Positions 2,041 through 8,264 of a stretch of 64,000 nucleotides of DNA are shown one piece after another (positions within the stretch are counted from its first letter, which is position 1; the number at the start of each line of letters is the position of its first letter). Below the pieces are notes generated by a model. The model was not told the DNA's origin and ran no database searches. It saw only the letters and a program-made list of their open reading frames with translations. The position numbers and the translations under genes were made by a program. The stretch is from Blastocladiella emersonii ATCC 22665 (lineage: Eukaryota > Fungi > Blastocladiomycota): NCBI GenBank assembly GCA_025594325.1, contig JANHCV010000003.1:558001-622000 (forward strand), read 5' to 3'.

Positions 2041-3192
2041 TCAGCAGTCGCCGTCGTCGGCCGACGGGCGCCCGAGCTGGCTGTACCGGCCGAGCGCGCT
2101 CGCGGGTCGGCGCGGGAGCGACGCCGCGGTGCCCGCCTCGGCCGCGGGACATAGCAGCGGCGTGTCCGTGGCCGCCGACGCAACGGACGCGAGCGGAGGG
2201 GTGCGGTGCAGCTGACGCAGGGCGCGCTGGTACCCGGCCGCGTCCACGTCCGCGTGCAGGAACATGAGCTGGCGCTCCGTGACGGACCGCGGCGGGACGG
2301 CGGCGCTCGAGCCGGCCGCCACGCGCGAGCCGGGGCGCGAGTCGGACCCGGACTCGCCGAGCGTGCTCGGGACGCTGGGCGTGGTGGTGGACGCGAGCTC
2401 GGACTTGAATTGATAAATCCTCACAAGGACCATCGTCCAACCAGTCGCGTACAGCGCAGCGAAGGTGGTGATGCGGTACAGCACGAGGGTGAGGAAGGTC
2501 GACTGCGCGAGGAACGTGGTGGTGATGATGATGGCGAAGGCGATCCGGACGCGGTGCGCAACGACCGCCGACCGGCGTGCGCGCTTGCTGCGGCTCCCGC
2601 GGCCGCCGCCCGTGCTGCCCTCGCGGAACCGCGCAATGACGCTGGTCACGTACAGCTCGCTGAACAGCGCGTGCACCGCCGACCCGAAGTTGACGGTCGC
2701 GCGCGCGATCTGCTGTGCCTGGAACAGCGCCGGCGGGTCGCGCACGCCCGCGAGCAGGTTGAGCTCGGACAGGGTACCGGCGACGCGCACCGCGACCGAC
2801 GCGAGGACCAGGATCACGAGGAGCGCGGGCGCGACCCAGTTGGCGGCGATCGGCGAGTAGACCCGGATCGCGGCCGCGCGCCGGTAGCAGATGAACGTGG
2901 CGAAGACCATGGCGATGAACTGGCACCAGTTGGACGTGGTGCGGAGCGCAAAGGCGAGCGTCGGGTCGCCGGGCAGGTAGTAGTTGAGCTGCACGTTGAT
3001 CCCGATGGCGACGAGCTGGCACAGCGCCGCGACGTGCAGCGCGCCCTCGAGCCTGGTGCGTGGCCGCGGCGACGCGCACAGCGCGCTCACCATGCTCAGC
3101 AGCAGGGCGCCGCCGAACGCCGTGCCGGCTGTCACGGATGCGCTGATCGCGTACGGCGTCACGGGCGGGAACGGTCGCGACGTGGCGCTCAT
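2041..3192 (-). CDS. Intronless seven-transmembrane (GPCR-like) protein, about 383 aa
   Basis: Likely start MSATSRPFPP at 3192, inside ORF 2041..3531. Seven hydrophobic segments, a basic ICYRRAAAI motif after TM3, a basic Gly/Arg-rich third intracellular loop, and a Ser/Thr-rich C-tail. Confidence 0.7.
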   Translation of the reverse strand: MSATSRPFPPVTPYAISASVTAGTAFGGALLLSMVSALCASPRPRTRLEGALHVAALCQLVAIGINVQLNYYLPGDPTLAFALRTTSNWCQFIAMVFATFICYRRAAAIRVYSPIAANWVAPALLVILVLASVAVRVAGTLSELNLLAGVRDPPALFQAQQIARATVNFGSAVHALFSELYVTSVIARFREGSTGGGRGSRSKRARRSAVVAHRVRIAFAIIITTTFLAQSTFLTLVLYRITTFAALYATGWTMVLVRIYQFKSELASTTTPSVPSTLGESGSDSRPGSRVAAGSSAAVPPRSVTERQLMFLHADVDAAGYQRALRQLHRTPPLASVASAATDTPLLCPAAEAGTAASLPRRPASALGRYSQLGRPSADDGDC

Positions 3193-3566
3193 GGGACGAG
3201 CAGCGTGACGTGACGAGGAGCGAGAGGTGCGTGGTTTGCGGCAAGCGTTGCAGGGGTGTGCGATGCGGCGCGATGCAGCGAGGGGAACGGGGAAGCGATT
3301 CGATGGTGGTGGTGGGAGGGAGGGCCGAGCGCACCGAATTCGCGGCAGTTCCCGATTCGGCCGCAGCGCTCGTTCTTCTCGACGCGAACCACACGCGCCG
3401 AGAAGCTCCCCCTGCCCTTTCGCCCTCGATTCGCACCTCGCGAGAGAACACACGGGAGGGAGAAGATGTACGCTGTGATTCGCAACGGAGCGGAGGGTGC
3501 CAACGAAAAAGAGGGGTGATAGGAGGGTCAAAATAACTTACAAAACTCGGCGCGTCTCGCCTTGTC

Positions 3567-4329
3567 CTACTCGAAGACGCGGTCGCCGCGGATCCGGCGA
3601 GCCAGGTGCAGGTCCTTGGTCATGAGCGTGACGCGCTTGGCGTGGATGGCGCACAGGTTGCTACGGTGGTGGGGGGTGAGGGCGGCGGGTCAGTGAGCAA
3701 GTCATCGCCGAGTCAGGCACAGGTGAGCGATGGCGTACGCGTCCTCCATGAGATGAACGATGTAGCTCTCGGCAGCCTCCTACACGGGGGCAGACATCGG
3801 GAGTCAGTGGTCCGGGGCCGGGTCGATGGTGCCGCAGTGAGCGAGCGAGCGAGGAGCGAACCTGGAGGGCACCAAGCGCAGACGCTTGCCAGCGGAACTG
3901 CTGGGTCGGCATCAAGTCGTCTGTGATCTCGCGGACGAGGCGCGAGAACGGGAGCCTGCGGAGGAGCAGGTCCGTCGTCTTCTGGTACTTGCGGATCTCG
4001 CGCAGTGCCACCGTGCCGGGGCGATACCGGCGCTTGTGCTTCTCGGTCGTCTCGGCGGACGCTGGAGCTAACCGAGCGGTACGGCGGAGCGCGCCAGCGA
4101 TAATGAGTCACGATGGACGGTGTGCGGATCGAGCGTCTCGACGCGATCTCAGGCAACCGCCCACTGAACCGATAGATGGATGGAAGCGCGTCGCCGACGT
4201 ACGAGTCTTCACGGGCGCCTTGCGAACCGCGGCGCCCGCCGCCGGAGCCGTCTTCGCGGCAAGCGACTTTTTGGCGGCACTCTTGCCGGTCGACGAGCCG
4301 GCGAAGTTGCTCTTCTTGGTCCGCGCCAT
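3567..4329 (-). CDS. CENH3: Centromeric histone H3 variant (CENP-A/Cse4/Cnp1 type), 4 exons
   Basis: Exons 4329-4203, 4061-3862, 3779-3739 and 3660-3567 splice to MARTKKS...[84 protein letters not shown]. CenH3 hallmarks: LPFS instead of LPFQ, RWQ instead of RFQ, loop 1 two residues longer than H3, and a divergent N-tail. Confidence 0.88.
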
Positions 4330-4624
4330 AGTGATGATGGTGGTGGAGGGCGCAAAGGAGTCGCACGTGGATGCAAGCGGCAAGAGGCGTTGCGGTCAAG
4401 CGGTGCGCGTCGAGTCGAATCGAGGACCAAGAAGACGTTGCGCCAGGTTTCGGCGGTCAAGTTACATTTAGCGCGTTAAGGCGTCTGGTCGTTCGCTTTG
4501 TTGGTTCTCGAGAGAAGAAGATAGCGAACGCGGCGGTGAGGCGAAGAGGAGCGTGGCGCGCGGCTCAGCTGATGCCACGCGAGCTGACTCGCCCGCTTTC
4601 GCTCCACCGTCTCCCGCCGCGCCG

Positions 4625-4630
4625 TATAAA
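4625..4630 (+). promoter_or_regulatory. TATA box (TATAAA) upstream of PCF11, in the divergent CENH3/PCF11 intergenic region
   Basis: TATAAA about 150 nt upstream of the ACCACCATG start at 4776, in otherwise GC-rich DNA. Confidence 0.5.
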
Positions 4631-4775
4631 GAGCGCGCGCCCGCCCGTCGCCCGCCGACGCTCCCGCAACGCTCATTAAGCAACGTAATACCACCACTGC
4701 GGCCGCCGTCTACTGGCCCCGCGTCACCAAGCCCCGCTACCACCACCGCACCGCCCGCTCCACAACACCACCACC

Positions 4776-7644
4776 ATGAACGCGGCCCAACTCGACGTCG
4801 TGCGGCAGGACTACCTCGCGTCGCTCGCCGAGCTCAAGGACACGTCGCGCCCGGCCATCATGACCCTCACGTCGCTCGCCGCCGAGACGGCCGTGGCCGC
4901 GCCCGCCGTCGTCGCCGCCATTGTCGAGCGCAGCTTCTCCGTACGGCTTCCCTCGACGCCTGCCCCCTGAGCTCGACTCCGTGGGCGGGGCTCAGCGGGG
5001 CGCACTACCGTCTGGTGAGTGTGCACTAATGATCGCCCGAACGTTCTCTTGTATACCCCTTCTCCCTGCTACTATCGGCTATGCCATGCTGCTCATGCAC
5101 CGACTCGACCGACTACTGTTCCTCAACTGCCTCATGCTCATGCTCACGGCGCTCGCCGACGCACTACTACCACTACCGCTCGCCCGCATGGCCTCGTGGC
5201 GCGGCGCGACTCGACCGACCGACCGACTGCTTTGGAATGGACCTGTCGCTGCTGCTGCACATCACCACCACACTTGCCCTACCCCCCTCCCATCGAACAA
5301 TAAAAAACCTGCTCTCGACGACACGGTCGCGCGCCTGCGCTCGCTCGCCCGCCCGCTCGGTTCGGCTCCTGCATCATCATCGTCGCCACGTCATCCTGTC
5401 AACTCTGCACCATCCGCGCGGGGCGGCTGATCGGTCCTGGCGTGTCGCTGATGCTGCTGTCCGTGATTTTGTGTCTGTCGATGATCGCGACGTGTATCTG
5501 TCCTCGAATACTCGTTGTTCATTCATCGTTCCTCTCCCCGCTCGTGGTCGCTCGCCTCTGCTGCTCTCCTCGTCTACCAACGACTCGACTCGCTCGCCCG
5601 GCTTCTCGACCCTCAGGCCGCGCCGCCCACCAAGCTGCCCGTCATGTACCTGATTGACTCGATTCTGAAGAATGTCGGCGGCCCGTACCCCGACCTGTTT
5701 GCCAAGGTGATTCTCGGGGTGTACCAGGACGCCTTCCTCGCGTCCGACGACCGCGCCCGTCAGGCCTTCTTGAAAGTGCTGCACACCTGGCGGAACCCGC
5801 CGCCTCCGCCTCCACCGACCTCGGCCGCCGCCGCTCCCGCCCGCCCGCGCGGCCCACTCTTCCCGCCCGCCGTCCTCGACCAGATCGACGCCTTCGTGCG
5901 CTCGGTCCCACGGGTACGTCGTGCTCCCGCCGTCGACCGTCGCGTCGGCCAACCCGAGGACTCACGCAAAAAACTGCAGCCCGTGGCACCGACCACCGCG
6001 ACCACGGCCACGGCCATGACCTCTGCGTCGTCCGCGGCCGCGGCCATGGCCGCCGCTGCTGCCGCCTCGGCTGCCTCCGCCGTGAACCCCGCCGACCCGG
6101 GCCTCGTCGACCTCAACACGCTCATCGAGGCGCGCACCGTGCAGGCGCACCAGAACCCGCTCGACGTCGACAACATCCAGAAGCTCGACGCCCTCATGCA
6201 GGTACGCTTCCCCCGCCCTTCACCCCGCCCAACTTGCGCTCACCTCCCCACCCGCACCATGTAGCTCCGCTCCCTGATCCTCGCCGGCCACGTCCCGCCG
6301 CAGCAAATGGACGCGGTACGGCAGTCGATTGCGGTGCTCGCGCACGAGTTCTTTGCCGCGCTCGCGCAGCAGCAGCAGCAGCAGCAGCTCCTCGGCGCGC
6401 TCGCCGCGGGGCTCCCGCTGCCCGCCGCCGCCGCCGCAGGCCTCGGCGGCTACGCTATGCCCGCGGTCCCGCTCGTCGTTCCGCCACTCGTCGTCCCGCT
6501 CCCCGGCACGGCGGGCGTGGGCGCAGTCGCGCCGCGCGCAGCGTCACCGCCCGTGGTGCCCGCGGTGCCGCGGATCGAGATCAGTTTGACGCGGTACGGT
6601 CTCATCTCGTCGTCGAGGGTAGCTCACTCGGACTAACGCCCTGGCTGCGATGTCTGTAGCCTCGAGCCCGACGCGGTCAAGTACGTGTACCCGGCCGACT
6701 CGAAGAAGTGCACGCAGTGCGGGCTGCGGTTCCTGCGCAACGGGCCGCGCCGCATGGACGACCACATGGACTGGCACTTCCGCATGAACCGCAAGGCCCG
6801 CGACAACACGCTGTCGATCCGGTCGCGCCTGTGGCTCCCGGCGTCGCGCGAGGCACGGTTCTCGTGGCGTTACCGTCGTGTAGCGCGCGTTGCTGACTCT
6901 GTCCTGCCGCGTCGTGTGTGTAGAACTGGCTCAACAACGAGCGCCAGGAAGCCTCGGCCGGCCCGTCCTTCTTCGACCAGGTCAACGACGCCGCCGCTGC
7001 TGCCTCCGCCGCCTCCGCCGCGTCGACCGACGGCCCCACCAGCTCGGCGCTCGGCAACACCAGCAGCTCGTCGACGTCGACGACGGCCGGCGCGGCCGCG
7101 GGACTTGACCACCTGCACCTGCACCTGCACCTTCACCACCTCGACCGCGGGTCCGCGTCCGACAGCGACGACGGCACGAGCCTCGGCGGCGACGACGCCT
7201 CGGGCGCGCGGATCCTCGCGCCCGCATCGGCCGCGGCGCGCCACGCGCTCGCGTGCGCCGTGTGCCTCGAGAAGATCGACTCCGGGTACGACGCGGACGC
7301 CGACGAGTGGATCGTCAAGGACGCGGTCGCGGAGCCGGTCGCGGCGGGGTCGCACGAGGCGAGTGATGGCAGCGGGGGCAGCTGTGTGTACTACCACCGC
7401 CGGTGCTGGCGGTCGCGCGCCAAGCGGGTACGTTTTCGGCTTGTGGGTGGCGAGTGGTTGGACGTGAGAGCTAACAACGTGTTGGATAGTCGCGCAAGCG
7501 GACAGCGAGTCCCATCGACGACGCGAGCGAGATGGCGAGCGACCTTGGGTCGAGCCTGGTACGCTTCGCTCTTCGCTTGGTCCCCAAGTCTCCATCACTG
7601 ACCCATCGCCTCGAACGTAGTCGGCCAAGCGGCAGCGCGTCTGA
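4776..7644 (+). CDS. PCF11: Cleavage/polyadenylation and termination factor Pcf11 (CID plus two zinc fingers), 8 exons
   Basis: Exon 1 (4776-4940) joined to exon 2 (from 5617) gives the CID ...VERSFS|AAPPTKLPVMYLIDSILKNVGGPY. Zinc finger 1 is CTQCGLRF...HMDWHF, followed by SRLWLPASRE|NW across a GC-AG intron (6853-6923). Zinc finger 2 is CAVCLEKIDSGYDADADEWIVKDAV...YHRRC. Last exon 7621-7644 (SAKRQRV*). Confidence 0.93.
5299..5304 (+). terminator. Candidate intronic polyadenylation signal AATAAA inside PCF11 intron 1
   Basis: AATAAA followed by AAA, inside the 676-nt intron 4941-5616. A TGTA lies upstream (5050-5053) and a GT/T-rich tract downstream (about 5463-5530). Confidence 0.45.
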
Positions 7645-7705
7645 CGAGCCTTCTTCTGCTTCCCATTGATACAAATATATATGATACACGTCCTCAACCT
7701 CAACC

Positions 7706-8264
7706 TCACTTGCGCGACAGCATCCCAATCACGAGCCCCGCGGCGGCAATCGCGCCGCCGACAATCGCCATCCCCACGAGCCCGTCCTTCTGGACCTGCG
7801 CGTCGATCGCGTCCAGCAGACCGCGCGCCTGCGGGTCCTCGGGGTGGTCGCGCAGCACCTGCTGGGCGTAGTTGCGCGCGTCCGCGAACCGCGCCAGCTT
7901 GAAGTACCCCTGCGCCACGTAGTACCGCGACTCACGACGCAGGGACGGGTTGTGCGGGATGATCTCTACAGACGCGGATGGCGGGGTTAGGGCGGGGAAG
8001 GGAGGGGGAGGGCAAGGGGAGGAGCGTACGCTGGAACAGGGCGATGCCGAGCTCAATCTCGTGGTACACGTTCGAGTGCACCAGGCCCCACGCGTAGTTA
8101 AAGGTCGTCGAGGCTACACAGATGCCATGTCAGCGAAGTCGCAGATATCCAGCGGCGTCGCGTGCCGTACTCGACGGGTTGGGCTGCTCGGCCTCGTACT
8201 GCTTGCGCAGCGTCGCGAGCTCCTTCTTGTCGATGGTGATTTCGCCCTCGAGCGGCGTCGTCAT
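7706..8264 (-). CDS. FIS1: Mitochondrial/peroxisomal fission protein Fis1 (TPR plus C-terminal tail anchor), 3 exons
   Basis: Spliced: LATLRKQYEAEQPNPSTSTTFNYAWGLVHS...RRESRYYVAQGYFKLARFADARNYAQQVLRDHPEDPQARGL...KDGLVGMAIVGGAIAAAGLVIGMLSRK*. Confidence 0.92.

What the first reader, a model, noticed from the sequence alone, without database searches (positions are those of the whole stretch)
4941..5616. PCF11 intron 1 looks like an autoregulatory intronic-polyadenylation switch at the same position as in vertebrates
Seen: intron 1 is 676 nt while almost every other intron here is about 50-140 nt. It is phase 0, six codons before the K of KLPVMYLIDS, and contains TGTA (5050-5053), AATAAA (5299-5304, the only perfect one I noticed in the window) and a downstream GT/T-rich tract. 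Read-through ends at TGA 4968-4970, giving a 64-aa CID fragment. Established: vertebrate PCF11 is autoregulated by premature cleavage at a poly(A) site in intron 1, and budding-yeast PCF11 is attenuated through the Nrd1 pathway. From memory, the human intron falls at ...QTAK|APSSEKLPVMY, which aligns exactly with ...RSFS|AAPPTKLPVMY here. Inference: this feedback circuit may be ancestral to opisthokonts and retained in an early-diverging fungus; I know of no report of that. Caveat: the normal 3' ends in this window do not obviously use AATAAA.
Basis: partly seen in the sequence, partly recalled or inferred. Interest (0 to 1): 0.85.

Follow-up and report, generated by a model that had tools for sequence, protein, structure and literature searches.

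The report
PCF11 first intron: huge AG-free zone
The unusually long first intron of the Blastocladiella emersonii PCF11 gene sits at exactly the same codon as the self-regulating intron of vertebrate PCF11, but the sequence gives no support for a poly(A) switch; it shows instead a 596-base stretch with no AG, the mark of a far-upstream splicing branch point.

Summary
The window is Blastocladiella emersonii ATCC 22665. The gene is its PCF11 orthologue.

**Observation: confirmed.** Intron 1 (4941-5616) is 676 nt and phase 0. The gene's other six introns are 62-71 nt.

**Position: confirmed.** The same phase-0 junction, five codons before the K of KLPV, occurs in a teleost, Limulus, a chytrid, a Mortierella relative and an uncultured blastoclad.

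**Poly(A) switch: not supported by any sequence test.**
- The single AATAAA is what chance gives (0.9 expected in the window).
- Its flanks are C- or GC-rich, and the GT-rich tract lies 160 nt away.
- The 5' splice site is the local consensus, not weak.
- Catenaria's intron has no hexamer and no conserved block.
- The intron is 111-139 nt in three other fungal lineages and absent in Allomyces.
- No RNA run was listed, so 3' ends are untested.

**What stands out.** Positions 5020-5614 hold no AG, where about 19 are expected (0 of 200,000 shuffles). The zone opens with a branch-site-like CACTAAT followed by a pyrimidine tract. Catenaria's orthologous intron has the same layout (237 nt AG-free). 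Other long fungal PCF11 introns and other non-coding stretches of the window do not.

**Best reading.** An ancient intron, enlarged here and spliced from a distant branch point. Any regulatory role is inferred. Another first-stage note on this same stretch also flagged the AG-free zone.

The parts
4776..4940 (+). PCF11 exon 1: first 55 codons of the CID domain
   Evidence: ORF and splice model. Identical to annotated protein P0001 residues 1-55.
4941..5616 (+). Intron 1: 676 nt, phase 0, GTACGG...CTCAG
   Evidence: It is about ten times longer than the gene's other introns and twice the longest of 105 EST-verified introns of this species.
4968..4970 (+). In-frame TGA reached if the intron is retained or the transcript ends inside it (64-aa product)
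5015..5020 (+). GTGAGT, a donor-like hexamer that holds the last AG before the AG-free zone
5020..5614 (+). AG exclusion zone: about 595 nt with no AG dinucleotide
   Evidence: The longest AG-free run in the window by threefold. About 19 AG are expected. No shuffle in 200,000 reaches it; the analytic estimate is about 4e-10.
5024..5030 (+). CACTAAT, a branch-site-like motif at the 5' edge of the AG-free zone (candidate branch A at 5029, 587 nt from the 3' splice site)
   Evidence: The other six introns each have CTNAC about 16-30 nt upstream of their AG (read by eye from the sequence).
5041..5070 (+). Pyrimidine tract (80% C+T) just downstream of the branch-like motif.
5296..5308 (+). A-rich element AACAATAAAAAAC with the only AATAAA of the window (5299-5304)
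   Evidence: The flanks are C-rich upstream and GC-rich downstream.
5464..5530 (+). GT/T-rich tract with a second TGTA (5493), 160-230 nt downstream of the hexamer
5575..5581 (+). TACCAAC, the only near-consensus branch-like motif close to the 3' splice site (36 nt away, one mismatch to CTNAC)
   Evidence: Read. There is no CTNAC within 470 nt of the 3' splice site.
5615..5616 (+). 3' splice site AG, the first AG after 5019
5617..7644 (+). Rest of PCF11. Exons: 5617-5913, 5980-6201, 6265-6593, 6660-6852, 6924-7427, 7490-7558, 7621-7644.
   Evidence: Pfam CID and zf_PCFS4 are recorded on the product.

Best explanation
**What it is.** Intron 1 of B. emersonii PCF11 is an ancient phase-0 intron shared with animals and other fungi. 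It was enlarged in the Blastocladiella/Catenaria lineage and is built as a distant-branch-point intron.

**How it most likely works.**
- A normal 5' splice site (GTACGG) is followed after about 85 nt by a branch-site-like CACTAAT and a pyrimidine tract.
- The AG that would normally follow about 20 nt later is missing. The next AG is the conserved exon-2 boundary, 587 nt downstream.
- Inferred: the branch forms near 5029. The first splicing step can happen soon after that point is transcribed. [quoted passage not shown]
- Selection keeps the whole interval free of AG, because any new AG would become a wrong acceptor.
- Inferred, more weakly: the long unstructured gap delays or limits productive splicing. 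Unspliced or prematurely ended transcripts stop at TGA 4968 and yield only a 64-aa fragment. This would make the intron a place where PCF11 output can be tuned.

**What the sequence does not show.** Nothing in it indicates a dedicated poly(A) site.
For: **Shown.**
- The AG-free run 5020-5614 is the longest in the window by threefold. No shuffle in 200,000 reaches it.
- Only AG is depleted: GA is 26 against 19 expected, and CT is 73 against 57.
- Upstream of the zone, AG is at normal density (3 in 79 nt).
- CACTAAT lies 4 nt inside the zone's 5' edge and is followed by an 80%-pyrimidine tract.
- There is no CTNAC within 470 nt of the 3' splice site. All six other introns have one about 16-30 nt from their AG (read by eye).
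- Catenaria's orthologous intron (265 nt) has the same layout. CTGAC and a T-run sit about 50-75 nt from the donor, followed by 237 nt without AG, the longest run in that locus (56 of 200,000 shuffles reach it). Its sequence cannot be aligned to the B. emersonii intron.

**Controls.**
- Long PCF11 introns of Allomyces, Actinomortierella and the chytrid have near-expected AG counts, with AG-free zones of 43-177 nt.
- All 15 other non-coding gaps of 150 nt or more in the window have observed/expected AG of 0.7-1.2.

**Match to the known class.** This is the published hallmark of distant branch points: an AG-free zone with the branch site and pyrimidine tract at its 5' end, and selection of the first AG downstream (PMC1431707).
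Against: - No lariat or RNA data exist. No RNA run was listed, and the three runs laid were DNA.
- A near-consensus TACCAAC lies 36 nt from the 3' splice site and could serve as a proximal branch.
- CACTAAT departs from the local CTNAC consensus at its last base.
- Verified distant branch points lie up to about 400 nt from their acceptor, and in mammals; 587 nt in a fungus with 60-79-nt introns would be extreme.
- The zone contains low-complexity repeats (CTG, CAT and CAC runs, and CGACTCGACCGAC twice). The positions are therefore not fully independent, and the P-values are somewhat optimistic.
- A regulatory role is purely inferred.
Confidence: 0.55

Rival explanations
1. One reading: a cleavage/polyadenylation site inside intron 1, at or after the A-rich element 5296-5308, competes with splicing. 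High Pcf11 would favour the short, non-functional transcript, giving negative feedback as in vertebrates.
For: - The intron position is identical to vertebrate intron 1, where a site in intron 1 (PAS1) autoregulates PCF11 (PMC6458999; PMC6428223).
- The intron is exceptionally long, which gives time for a competing reaction.
- It holds the window's only AATAAA, one of its 9 AAAAAA and one of its 9 TGTATA.
- TGTA/TATA motifs do occur in the 3' UTRs seen here.
- Budding-yeast PCF11 is also attenuated early in the transcript (PMC3197677).
- The short product would be a 64-aa CID fragment.
Against: - The AATAAA count equals chance, and none of the window's ordinary gene ends has the hexamer.
- There is no UGUA/UAUA within 60 nt upstream. 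The 60 nt downstream are GC-rich with 17% T. The TGTATA is 245 nt upstream and the GT-rich tract 160 nt downstream.
- TGTATA also occurs in promoter-side intergenic DNA.
- The 5' splice site is consensus, unlike the very weak vertebrate one (GTTTTT in the teleost).
- Catenaria's intron has no hexamer and no conserved block.
- The intron is 111-139 nt in three other lineages and absent in Allomyces.
- AG avoidance is not explained by a poly(A) site.
- No RNA evidence is available.
Confidence: 0.12
2. An ordinary, functionless long intron spliced from a proximal branch (for example TACCAAC at -36). On this reading the lack of AG comes from something other than branch-to-acceptor scanning. One possibility is growth by duplication of AG-free simple repeats. 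Another is general selection against decoy acceptors in a species whose spliceosome expects 60-79-nt introns.
For: - Short direct repeats and trinucleotide runs fill part of the zone.
- A near-consensus branch motif lies 36 nt from the acceptor.
- The B. emersonii and Catenaria introns share no sequence.
- The intron is dispensable in Allomyces.
Against: - The 86 A residues in varied contexts are never followed by G, while GA is above expectation.
- The same architecture recurs in Catenaria, with a different sequence and a different base composition.
- Other long introns of related fungi and other non-coding DNA of this window keep normal AG density.
- The zone begins exactly at a branch-site-plus-pyrimidine-tract unit.
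Confidence: 0.2
3. Alternative 5' splice site or poison micro-exon. GTGAGT at 5015 is used as a donor, either extending exon 1 or, with the AG at 4994-4995, defining a 19-nt exon (4996-5014). Both produce frameshifted or stop-containing mRNAs as an unproductive splicing switch.
For: - GTGAGT is a strong generic donor and sits exactly where the AG-free zone starts.
- An extended exon 1 meets TGA 4968, and a 19-nt exon shifts the frame (own reading).
- The idea was raised in another first-stage note.
Against: - All other donors in this gene are GTACG-type or GCACGG.
- No branch motif precedes the AG at 4994.
- The proposed upstream intron (4941-4995) would be 55 nt, at the bottom of the species' range, and has no CTNAC.
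- No transcript data are available.
Confidence: 0.06

Closest known systems
Vertebrate PCF11 intron-1 poly(A) site, called PAS1 or the IPA site (Kamieniarz-Gdula et al. 2019, PMC6458999; Wang et al. 2019, PMC6428223)
   Same: Same gene and the same phase-0 intron position inside the CID domain (teleost checked). The intron is large for its genome. A transcript ending inside it would encode only part of the CID.
   Different: Vertebrates have conserved tandem AATAAA, high sequence conservation of the intron and a very weak 5' splice site. Here there is one chance-level hexamer in a poor context, no conservation with Catenaria and a consensus 5' splice site. The teleost intron has normal AG density (111 observed, 133 expected; AG-free zone of 14 nt).
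Distant-branch-point exons marked by AG exclusion zones (Gooding et al. 2006, PMC1431707), such as alpha-tropomyosin exon 3 and PTB exon 11
   Same: A long AG-free interval ends at the acceptor. A branch-site-like motif and a pyrimidine tract sit at its 5' end. AG density is normal upstream of it. The acceptor is the first AG downstream.
   Different: The known cases are mammalian, with branch points up to about 400 nt away, usually in front of regulated cassette exons. Here the gap is 587 nt, in a fungus with 60-79-nt introns, in front of a constitutive, conserved exon. The branch has not been mapped.
Nrd1-dependent early attenuation of S. cerevisiae PCF11 (Creamer et al. 2011, PMC3197677)
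   Same: Negative control of PCF11 acting near the 5' end of the transcript.
   Different: The yeast mechanism uses Nrd1/Nab3 sites in the 5' UTR of an intronless gene. This intron has one UCUUG and no GUAA or GUAG.
Yeast introns with long branch-to-acceptor distance that rely on RNA structure (PMC3239191)
   Same: A branch-to-acceptor distance beyond the usual range.
   Different: No such structure is predicted here. The intron folds less stably than its shuffles (z = +2.57). The structure-shortened branch-to-acceptor path (43) equals that of shuffles (43.5 +/- 19).

Membership tests
Vertebrate-type PCF11 intron-1 poly(A) autoregulation | The regulatory intron is the first coding intron, splitting the CID at the same codon | tested here: met
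   B. emersonii has ERSFS|AAPPTK and the teleost has AQISK|APSAEK, both phase 0 and five codons before the K. Human itself was not checked.
Vertebrate-type PCF11 intron-1 poly(A) autoregulation | A strong, conserved poly(A) signal (tandem AATAAA) inside the intron | tested here: not met
   There is one AATAAA where 0.9 is expected by chance in the window. Its flanks are poor. Catenaria has none.
Vertebrate-type PCF11 intron-1 poly(A) autoregulation | Intron sequence conserved among relatives more than other introns | tested here: not met
   No conserved block between the B. emersonii and Catenaria introns (alignment A1). Only the architecture is shared.
Vertebrate-type PCF11 intron-1 poly(A) autoregulation | Very weak 5' splice site combined with a large intron | tested here: inconclusive
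   Large intron: met. Weak donor: not met, because GTACGG is the same as intron 4 and matches the GTACG pattern of the gene's other introns.
Vertebrate-type PCF11 intron-1 poly(A) autoregulation | A polyadenylated short isoform exists and its use follows PCF11 level | not testable with these tools
   No RNA run was listed. The runs laid were DNA. No record exists of the 64-aa product.
Distant-branch-point intron with AG exclusion zone | Extended AG-free region immediately upstream of the acceptor, beyond chance | tested here: met
   A run of 596 nt; no shuffle in 200,000 reaches it.
Distant-branch-point intron with AG exclusion zone | Branch-site consensus and pyrimidine tract near the 5' end of the zone, with normal AG density upstream | tested here: met
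   CACTAAT at 5024-5030, an 80%-pyrimidine tract at 5041-5070, and 3 AG in the 79 nt upstream. This rests on sequence only.
Distant-branch-point intron with AG exclusion zone | No usable branch site near the acceptor | tested here: inconclusive
   No CTNAC within 470 nt of the acceptor, but TACCAAC, with one mismatch, lies at -36.
Distant-branch-point intron with AG exclusion zone | Branch nucleotide mapped experimentally, and an inserted AG captured as acceptor | not testable with these tools
   Needs lariat mapping or a minigene.
PCF11 orthologue (the gene itself) | N-terminal CID, Pcf11-type zinc fingers, and best matches to PCF11 of fungi and animals | tested here: met
   Pfam CID and zf_PCFS4 are recorded on the product, and a source names it 'mRNA 3' end processing factor'. 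Its relatives are PCF11 proteins.

The most novel reading that the evidence does not exclude
PCF11 intron 1 is an old regulatory node that different lineages use in different ways. In the Blastocladiella/Catenaria lineage, the first splicing step would be committed at a branch about 90 nt into the intron, while the acceptor lies about 590 nt further on. Productive mRNA would then depend on RNA polymerase II surviving that AG-free window. Pcf11 is itself a termination factor. It would lower its own output by ending transcription there, with or without polyadenylation near the A-rich element. That would be a functional analogue of vertebrate PAS1, built from a distant-branch-point intron.
Probability: 0.12. 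Interest if true: 0.85.

Novelty: new variant of a known kind. Interest (0 to 1): 0.58.

Why it matters
**If the branch point really lies about 587 nt from the acceptor.** This would be one of the longest branch-to-acceptor distances proposed for any intron, and it would occur in a fungus whose introns are normally 60-79 nt. It would show that selection of the first AG downstream can work over such distances without help from RNA structure.

**Why the location adds interest.** The feature sits in the one PCF11 intron that is autoregulatory in vertebrates, and its architecture is shared by two genera whose intron sequences cannot be aligned. That makes it a concrete, testable candidate for lineage-specific control of a core 3'-end and termination factor.

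**What it does not show.** The data argue against a simple story of a poly(A) feedback circuit inherited from the opisthokont ancestor. The intron position is ancient. The long length and the hexamer are not.

Tried and rejected
- **RNA evidence.** The look-up of sequencing runs listed no RNA run. A second search of any kind listed only three DNA runs of one sample. Laid on 4000-8000, they are contiguous genomic contigs with no splice joints or poly(A) ends, so this was uninformative. An exact-product lookup for the 64-aa read-through ORF found nothing.
- **Known RNA families.** An Rfam scan of 4300-6000 gave only sub-threshold chance hits, with no snoRNA or other known RNA in the intron.
- **Repeats.** The intron has no other copy in the window. 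Internally it has only short direct repeats.
- **RNA structure that collapses the intron.** The intron folds less stably than its shuffles, and its structure-shortened branch-to-acceptor distance equals that of shuffles. The 11-nt inverted repeat 4981-4991/5620-5630 and the 8-bp helix 5201-5208/5619-5626 were treated as chance in GC-rich sequence.
- **TGTATA as a 3'-end marker.** Of 9 sites in the window, several lie in promoter-side intergenic DNA by a rough coding map, so the motif is not diagnostic.
- **Nrd1/Nab3-type motif cluster.** Absent.
- **Alternative in-frame start inside the intron.** No ATG lies in frame with exon 2 after the last in-frame stop.
- **First vertebrate search.** It returned only arthropods. 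A second search reached teleosts.
Full report
**Identity**

The window matches assembly GCA_025594325.1 (JANHCV01), which is Blastocladiella emersonii ATCC 22665. The gene at 4776-7644 (+) is its PCF11 orthologue. Pfam CID and a Pcf11-type zinc finger are recorded on the product. A source names it 'mRNA 3' end processing factor'. Its relatives are fungal and animal PCF11 proteins.

- Exon 1 (4776-4940) encodes 55 residues.
- Intron 1 runs from GTACGG at 4941 to the AG at 5615-5616. It is 676 nt and phase 0.
- Exon 2 begins with AAPPTKLPVMYLIDS.
- The deposited annotation uses the same junction.
- The other six introns are 62-71 nt.
- A published set of 105 EST-verified introns of this species spans 55-333 nt, with most at 60-79 nt and a CTAAC branch consensus (PMC2773782).

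I mapped proteins onto their own genomic loci. A phase-0 intron lies exactly five codons before the K of KLPV in each of the following:

| Organism | Intron length |
|---|---|
| B. emersonii | 676 nt |
| Uncultured AT-rich blastoclad (keeps the PCF11-Fis1 neighbourhood) | 139 nt |
| Chytrid Polyrhizophydium stewartii | 111 nt |
| Actinomortierella wolfii | 122 nt |
| Horseshoe crab Limulus | about 21.3 kb |
| Teleost Clinocottus analis | 2296 nt (donor GTTTTT, three AATAAA) |

- Catenaria anguillulae has the intron shifted by a nucleotide or so (265 nt as annotated).
- Two Allomyces species and two unassigned contigs encode this stretch without interruption.
- The position is therefore an old opisthokont intron position. 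It has been lost more than once, and the intron is short in most fungi that keep it.

**The poly(A) reading finds no support in the sequence**

Conserved tandem AATAAA in a conserved first intron, a very weak donor and a short isoform encoding part of the CID mediate autoregulation (PMC6458999; PMC6428223). Here:

- The one AATAAA is the only copy in 64 kb on either strand, but shuffles give 0.9 on average. The gene ends in the window manage without it.
- The four 3' regions I read carry TGTA/TATAT-type elements instead.
- Around the hexamer, the 60 nt upstream are C-rich with no UGUA. The 60 nt downstream are GC-rich with 17% T. The TGTATA lies 245 nt upstream and the GT-rich tract 160 nt downstream.
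- AT-rich hexamers such as TGTATA also occur in promoter-side intergenic DNA.
- The donor GTACGG is the local consensus.
- Catenaria's intron has no AATAAA or ATTAAA and cannot be aligned to this one.

No RNA run was listed, so whether 3' ends map in the intron remains untested.

**What is really unusual: the AG-free zone**

A lead from another first-stage note on this same stretch held up when I tested it.

- Positions 5020-5614 contain no AG. AG occurs 3120 times on this strand of the window, and the next longest AG-free run is 203 nt.
- Base composition predicts about 19 AG. GA (26 against 19 expected) and CT (73 against 57) are not depleted, so the effect is specific to AG on the transcribed strand.
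- No mononucleotide shuffle in 200,000 reaches the observed run.
- The zone starts immediately after the AG of a GTGAGT (5015-5020). Four bases later comes CACTAAT (5024-5030), followed by an 80%-pyrimidine tract (5041-5070).
- Upstream of the zone, AG density is normal (3 in 79 nt).
- No CTNAC lies within 470 nt of the acceptor, although each of the six short introns has one about 16-30 nt from its AG, as read by eye. The nearest approximations are TACCAAC at -36 and CTGAT at -165 and -186.

This is the published signature of a distant branch point. In that class the branch site and pyrimidine tract sit at the 5' end of an AG exclusion zone. The first step is independent of the AG. The acceptor is then taken as the first AG downstream. 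Verified cases lie up to about 400 nt away (PMC1431707).

**The architecture is shared with Catenaria but not the sequence**

Catenaria's orthologous intron has CTGAC and a T-run about 50-75 nt from the donor. These are followed by 237 nt without AG, where 7 are expected. That is the longest run in its 7.8-kb locus, and 56 of 200,000 shuffles reach it.

**Controls**

- Long PCF11 introns elsewhere keep near-expected AG counts, with AG-free zones of 43-177 nt. These are the Allomyces introns of 420-573 nt, the Actinomortierella introns of 348 and 745 nt and the chytrid intron of 225 nt.
- The teleost intron 1 has 111 AG against 133 expected.
- All 15 other non-coding gaps of 150 nt or more between same-strand coding segments of this window have observed/expected AG of 0.7-1.2. 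This intron has 3 against 21.

**RNA structure**

RNA structure does not bridge the gap. The intron folds less stably than dinucleotide shuffles (z = +2.57). The structure-shortened path from 5029 to 5616 equals that of shuffles. Other first-stage notes propose that long introns of this genome are closed by long-range stems (unverified). This intron does not fit that pattern.

**Mechanism, with its status**

- *Shown:* an enlarged, positionally ancient intron; a highly significant AG-free zone that begins at a branch-site-plus-pyrimidine-tract unit; the same layout in a second genus; and a stop nine codons into the intron.
- *Inferred:* branching near A5029, an early first step, and acceptor choice by the first downstream AG.
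- *Weakly inferred:* the 587-nt unstructured gap slows or gates productive splicing and so offers a control point.
- *Speculative:* because Pcf11 ends transcription, premature termination inside this window could feed back on its own mRNA.

**Verdict**

The intron-position claim is confirmed on a teleost and extended to other lineages. The claim of an ancestral poly(A) switch is not supported by any sequence feature I could test, and it remains untested at the RNA level. The stretch is still worth a bench follow-up because of the conserved giant AG exclusion zone, which is a new variant of the known distant-branch-point class.

Noticed in passing
window 6853-6923: A GC-AG intron (GCACGG...TGTAG, 71 nt) gives ...LPASRENWLNNE..., which aligns without a gap to the Allomyces and other PCF11 proteins. 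The deposited model instead reads 27 nt further and uses a 44-nt GT-AG intron, which inserts ARFSWRYRR. The GC-AG model looks better.
   Followed up: partly
L002 (Catenaria anguillulae) 3001-5999: The Catenaria PCF11 gene seems to be annotated as two genes (428 aa with the CID, then 283 aa with Pcf11_C). It also has an implausible 32-nt 'intron' at 3716-3747, so the model probably needs repair. Two overlapping donor-like sites, GTGCGT (3250) and GTACTT (3254), sit at intron 1, and only the second keeps the frame.
   Followed up: partly
L003, L004 (Allomyces) and L009, compared with window 7706-8264: The neighbourhood PCF11 followed by convergent Fis1 is kept in B. emersonii, two Allomyces species and an uncultured AT-rich blastoclad. 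That contig is filed as a JGI metagenome record with prokaryote-style gene calls.
   Followed up: no
L003 3523-3942 and 4590-5162; L004 2023-2491 and 3129-3624: Allomyces PCF11 lacks intron 1 but has two long introns (420-573 nt) at other positions, with AG-free zones of about 100-180 nt. Fairly distant branch points may be common in long introns of these fungi.
   Followed up: partly
window 7645-7705: PCF11 and the convergent Fis1 gene have stop codons only 61 nt apart. They share a palindromic AT-rich element (ACAAATATATATGATACA) that could serve as a 3'-end signal for both strands.
   Followed up: no
window 3567-4329 (-): A histone H3-like gene with a divergent N-terminal tail ([13 protein letters not shown]...) lies head-to-head with PCF11, about 450 nt between their start codons. 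It may be a centromeric H3 variant.
   Followed up: no
window 5201-5208 with 5619-5626: A perfect 8-bp GC helix (GCGGCGCG/CGCGCCGC) in the minimum-free-energy fold pairs the middle of the intron with the first bases of exon 2. I treated it as chance in GC-rich sequence.
   Followed up: partly
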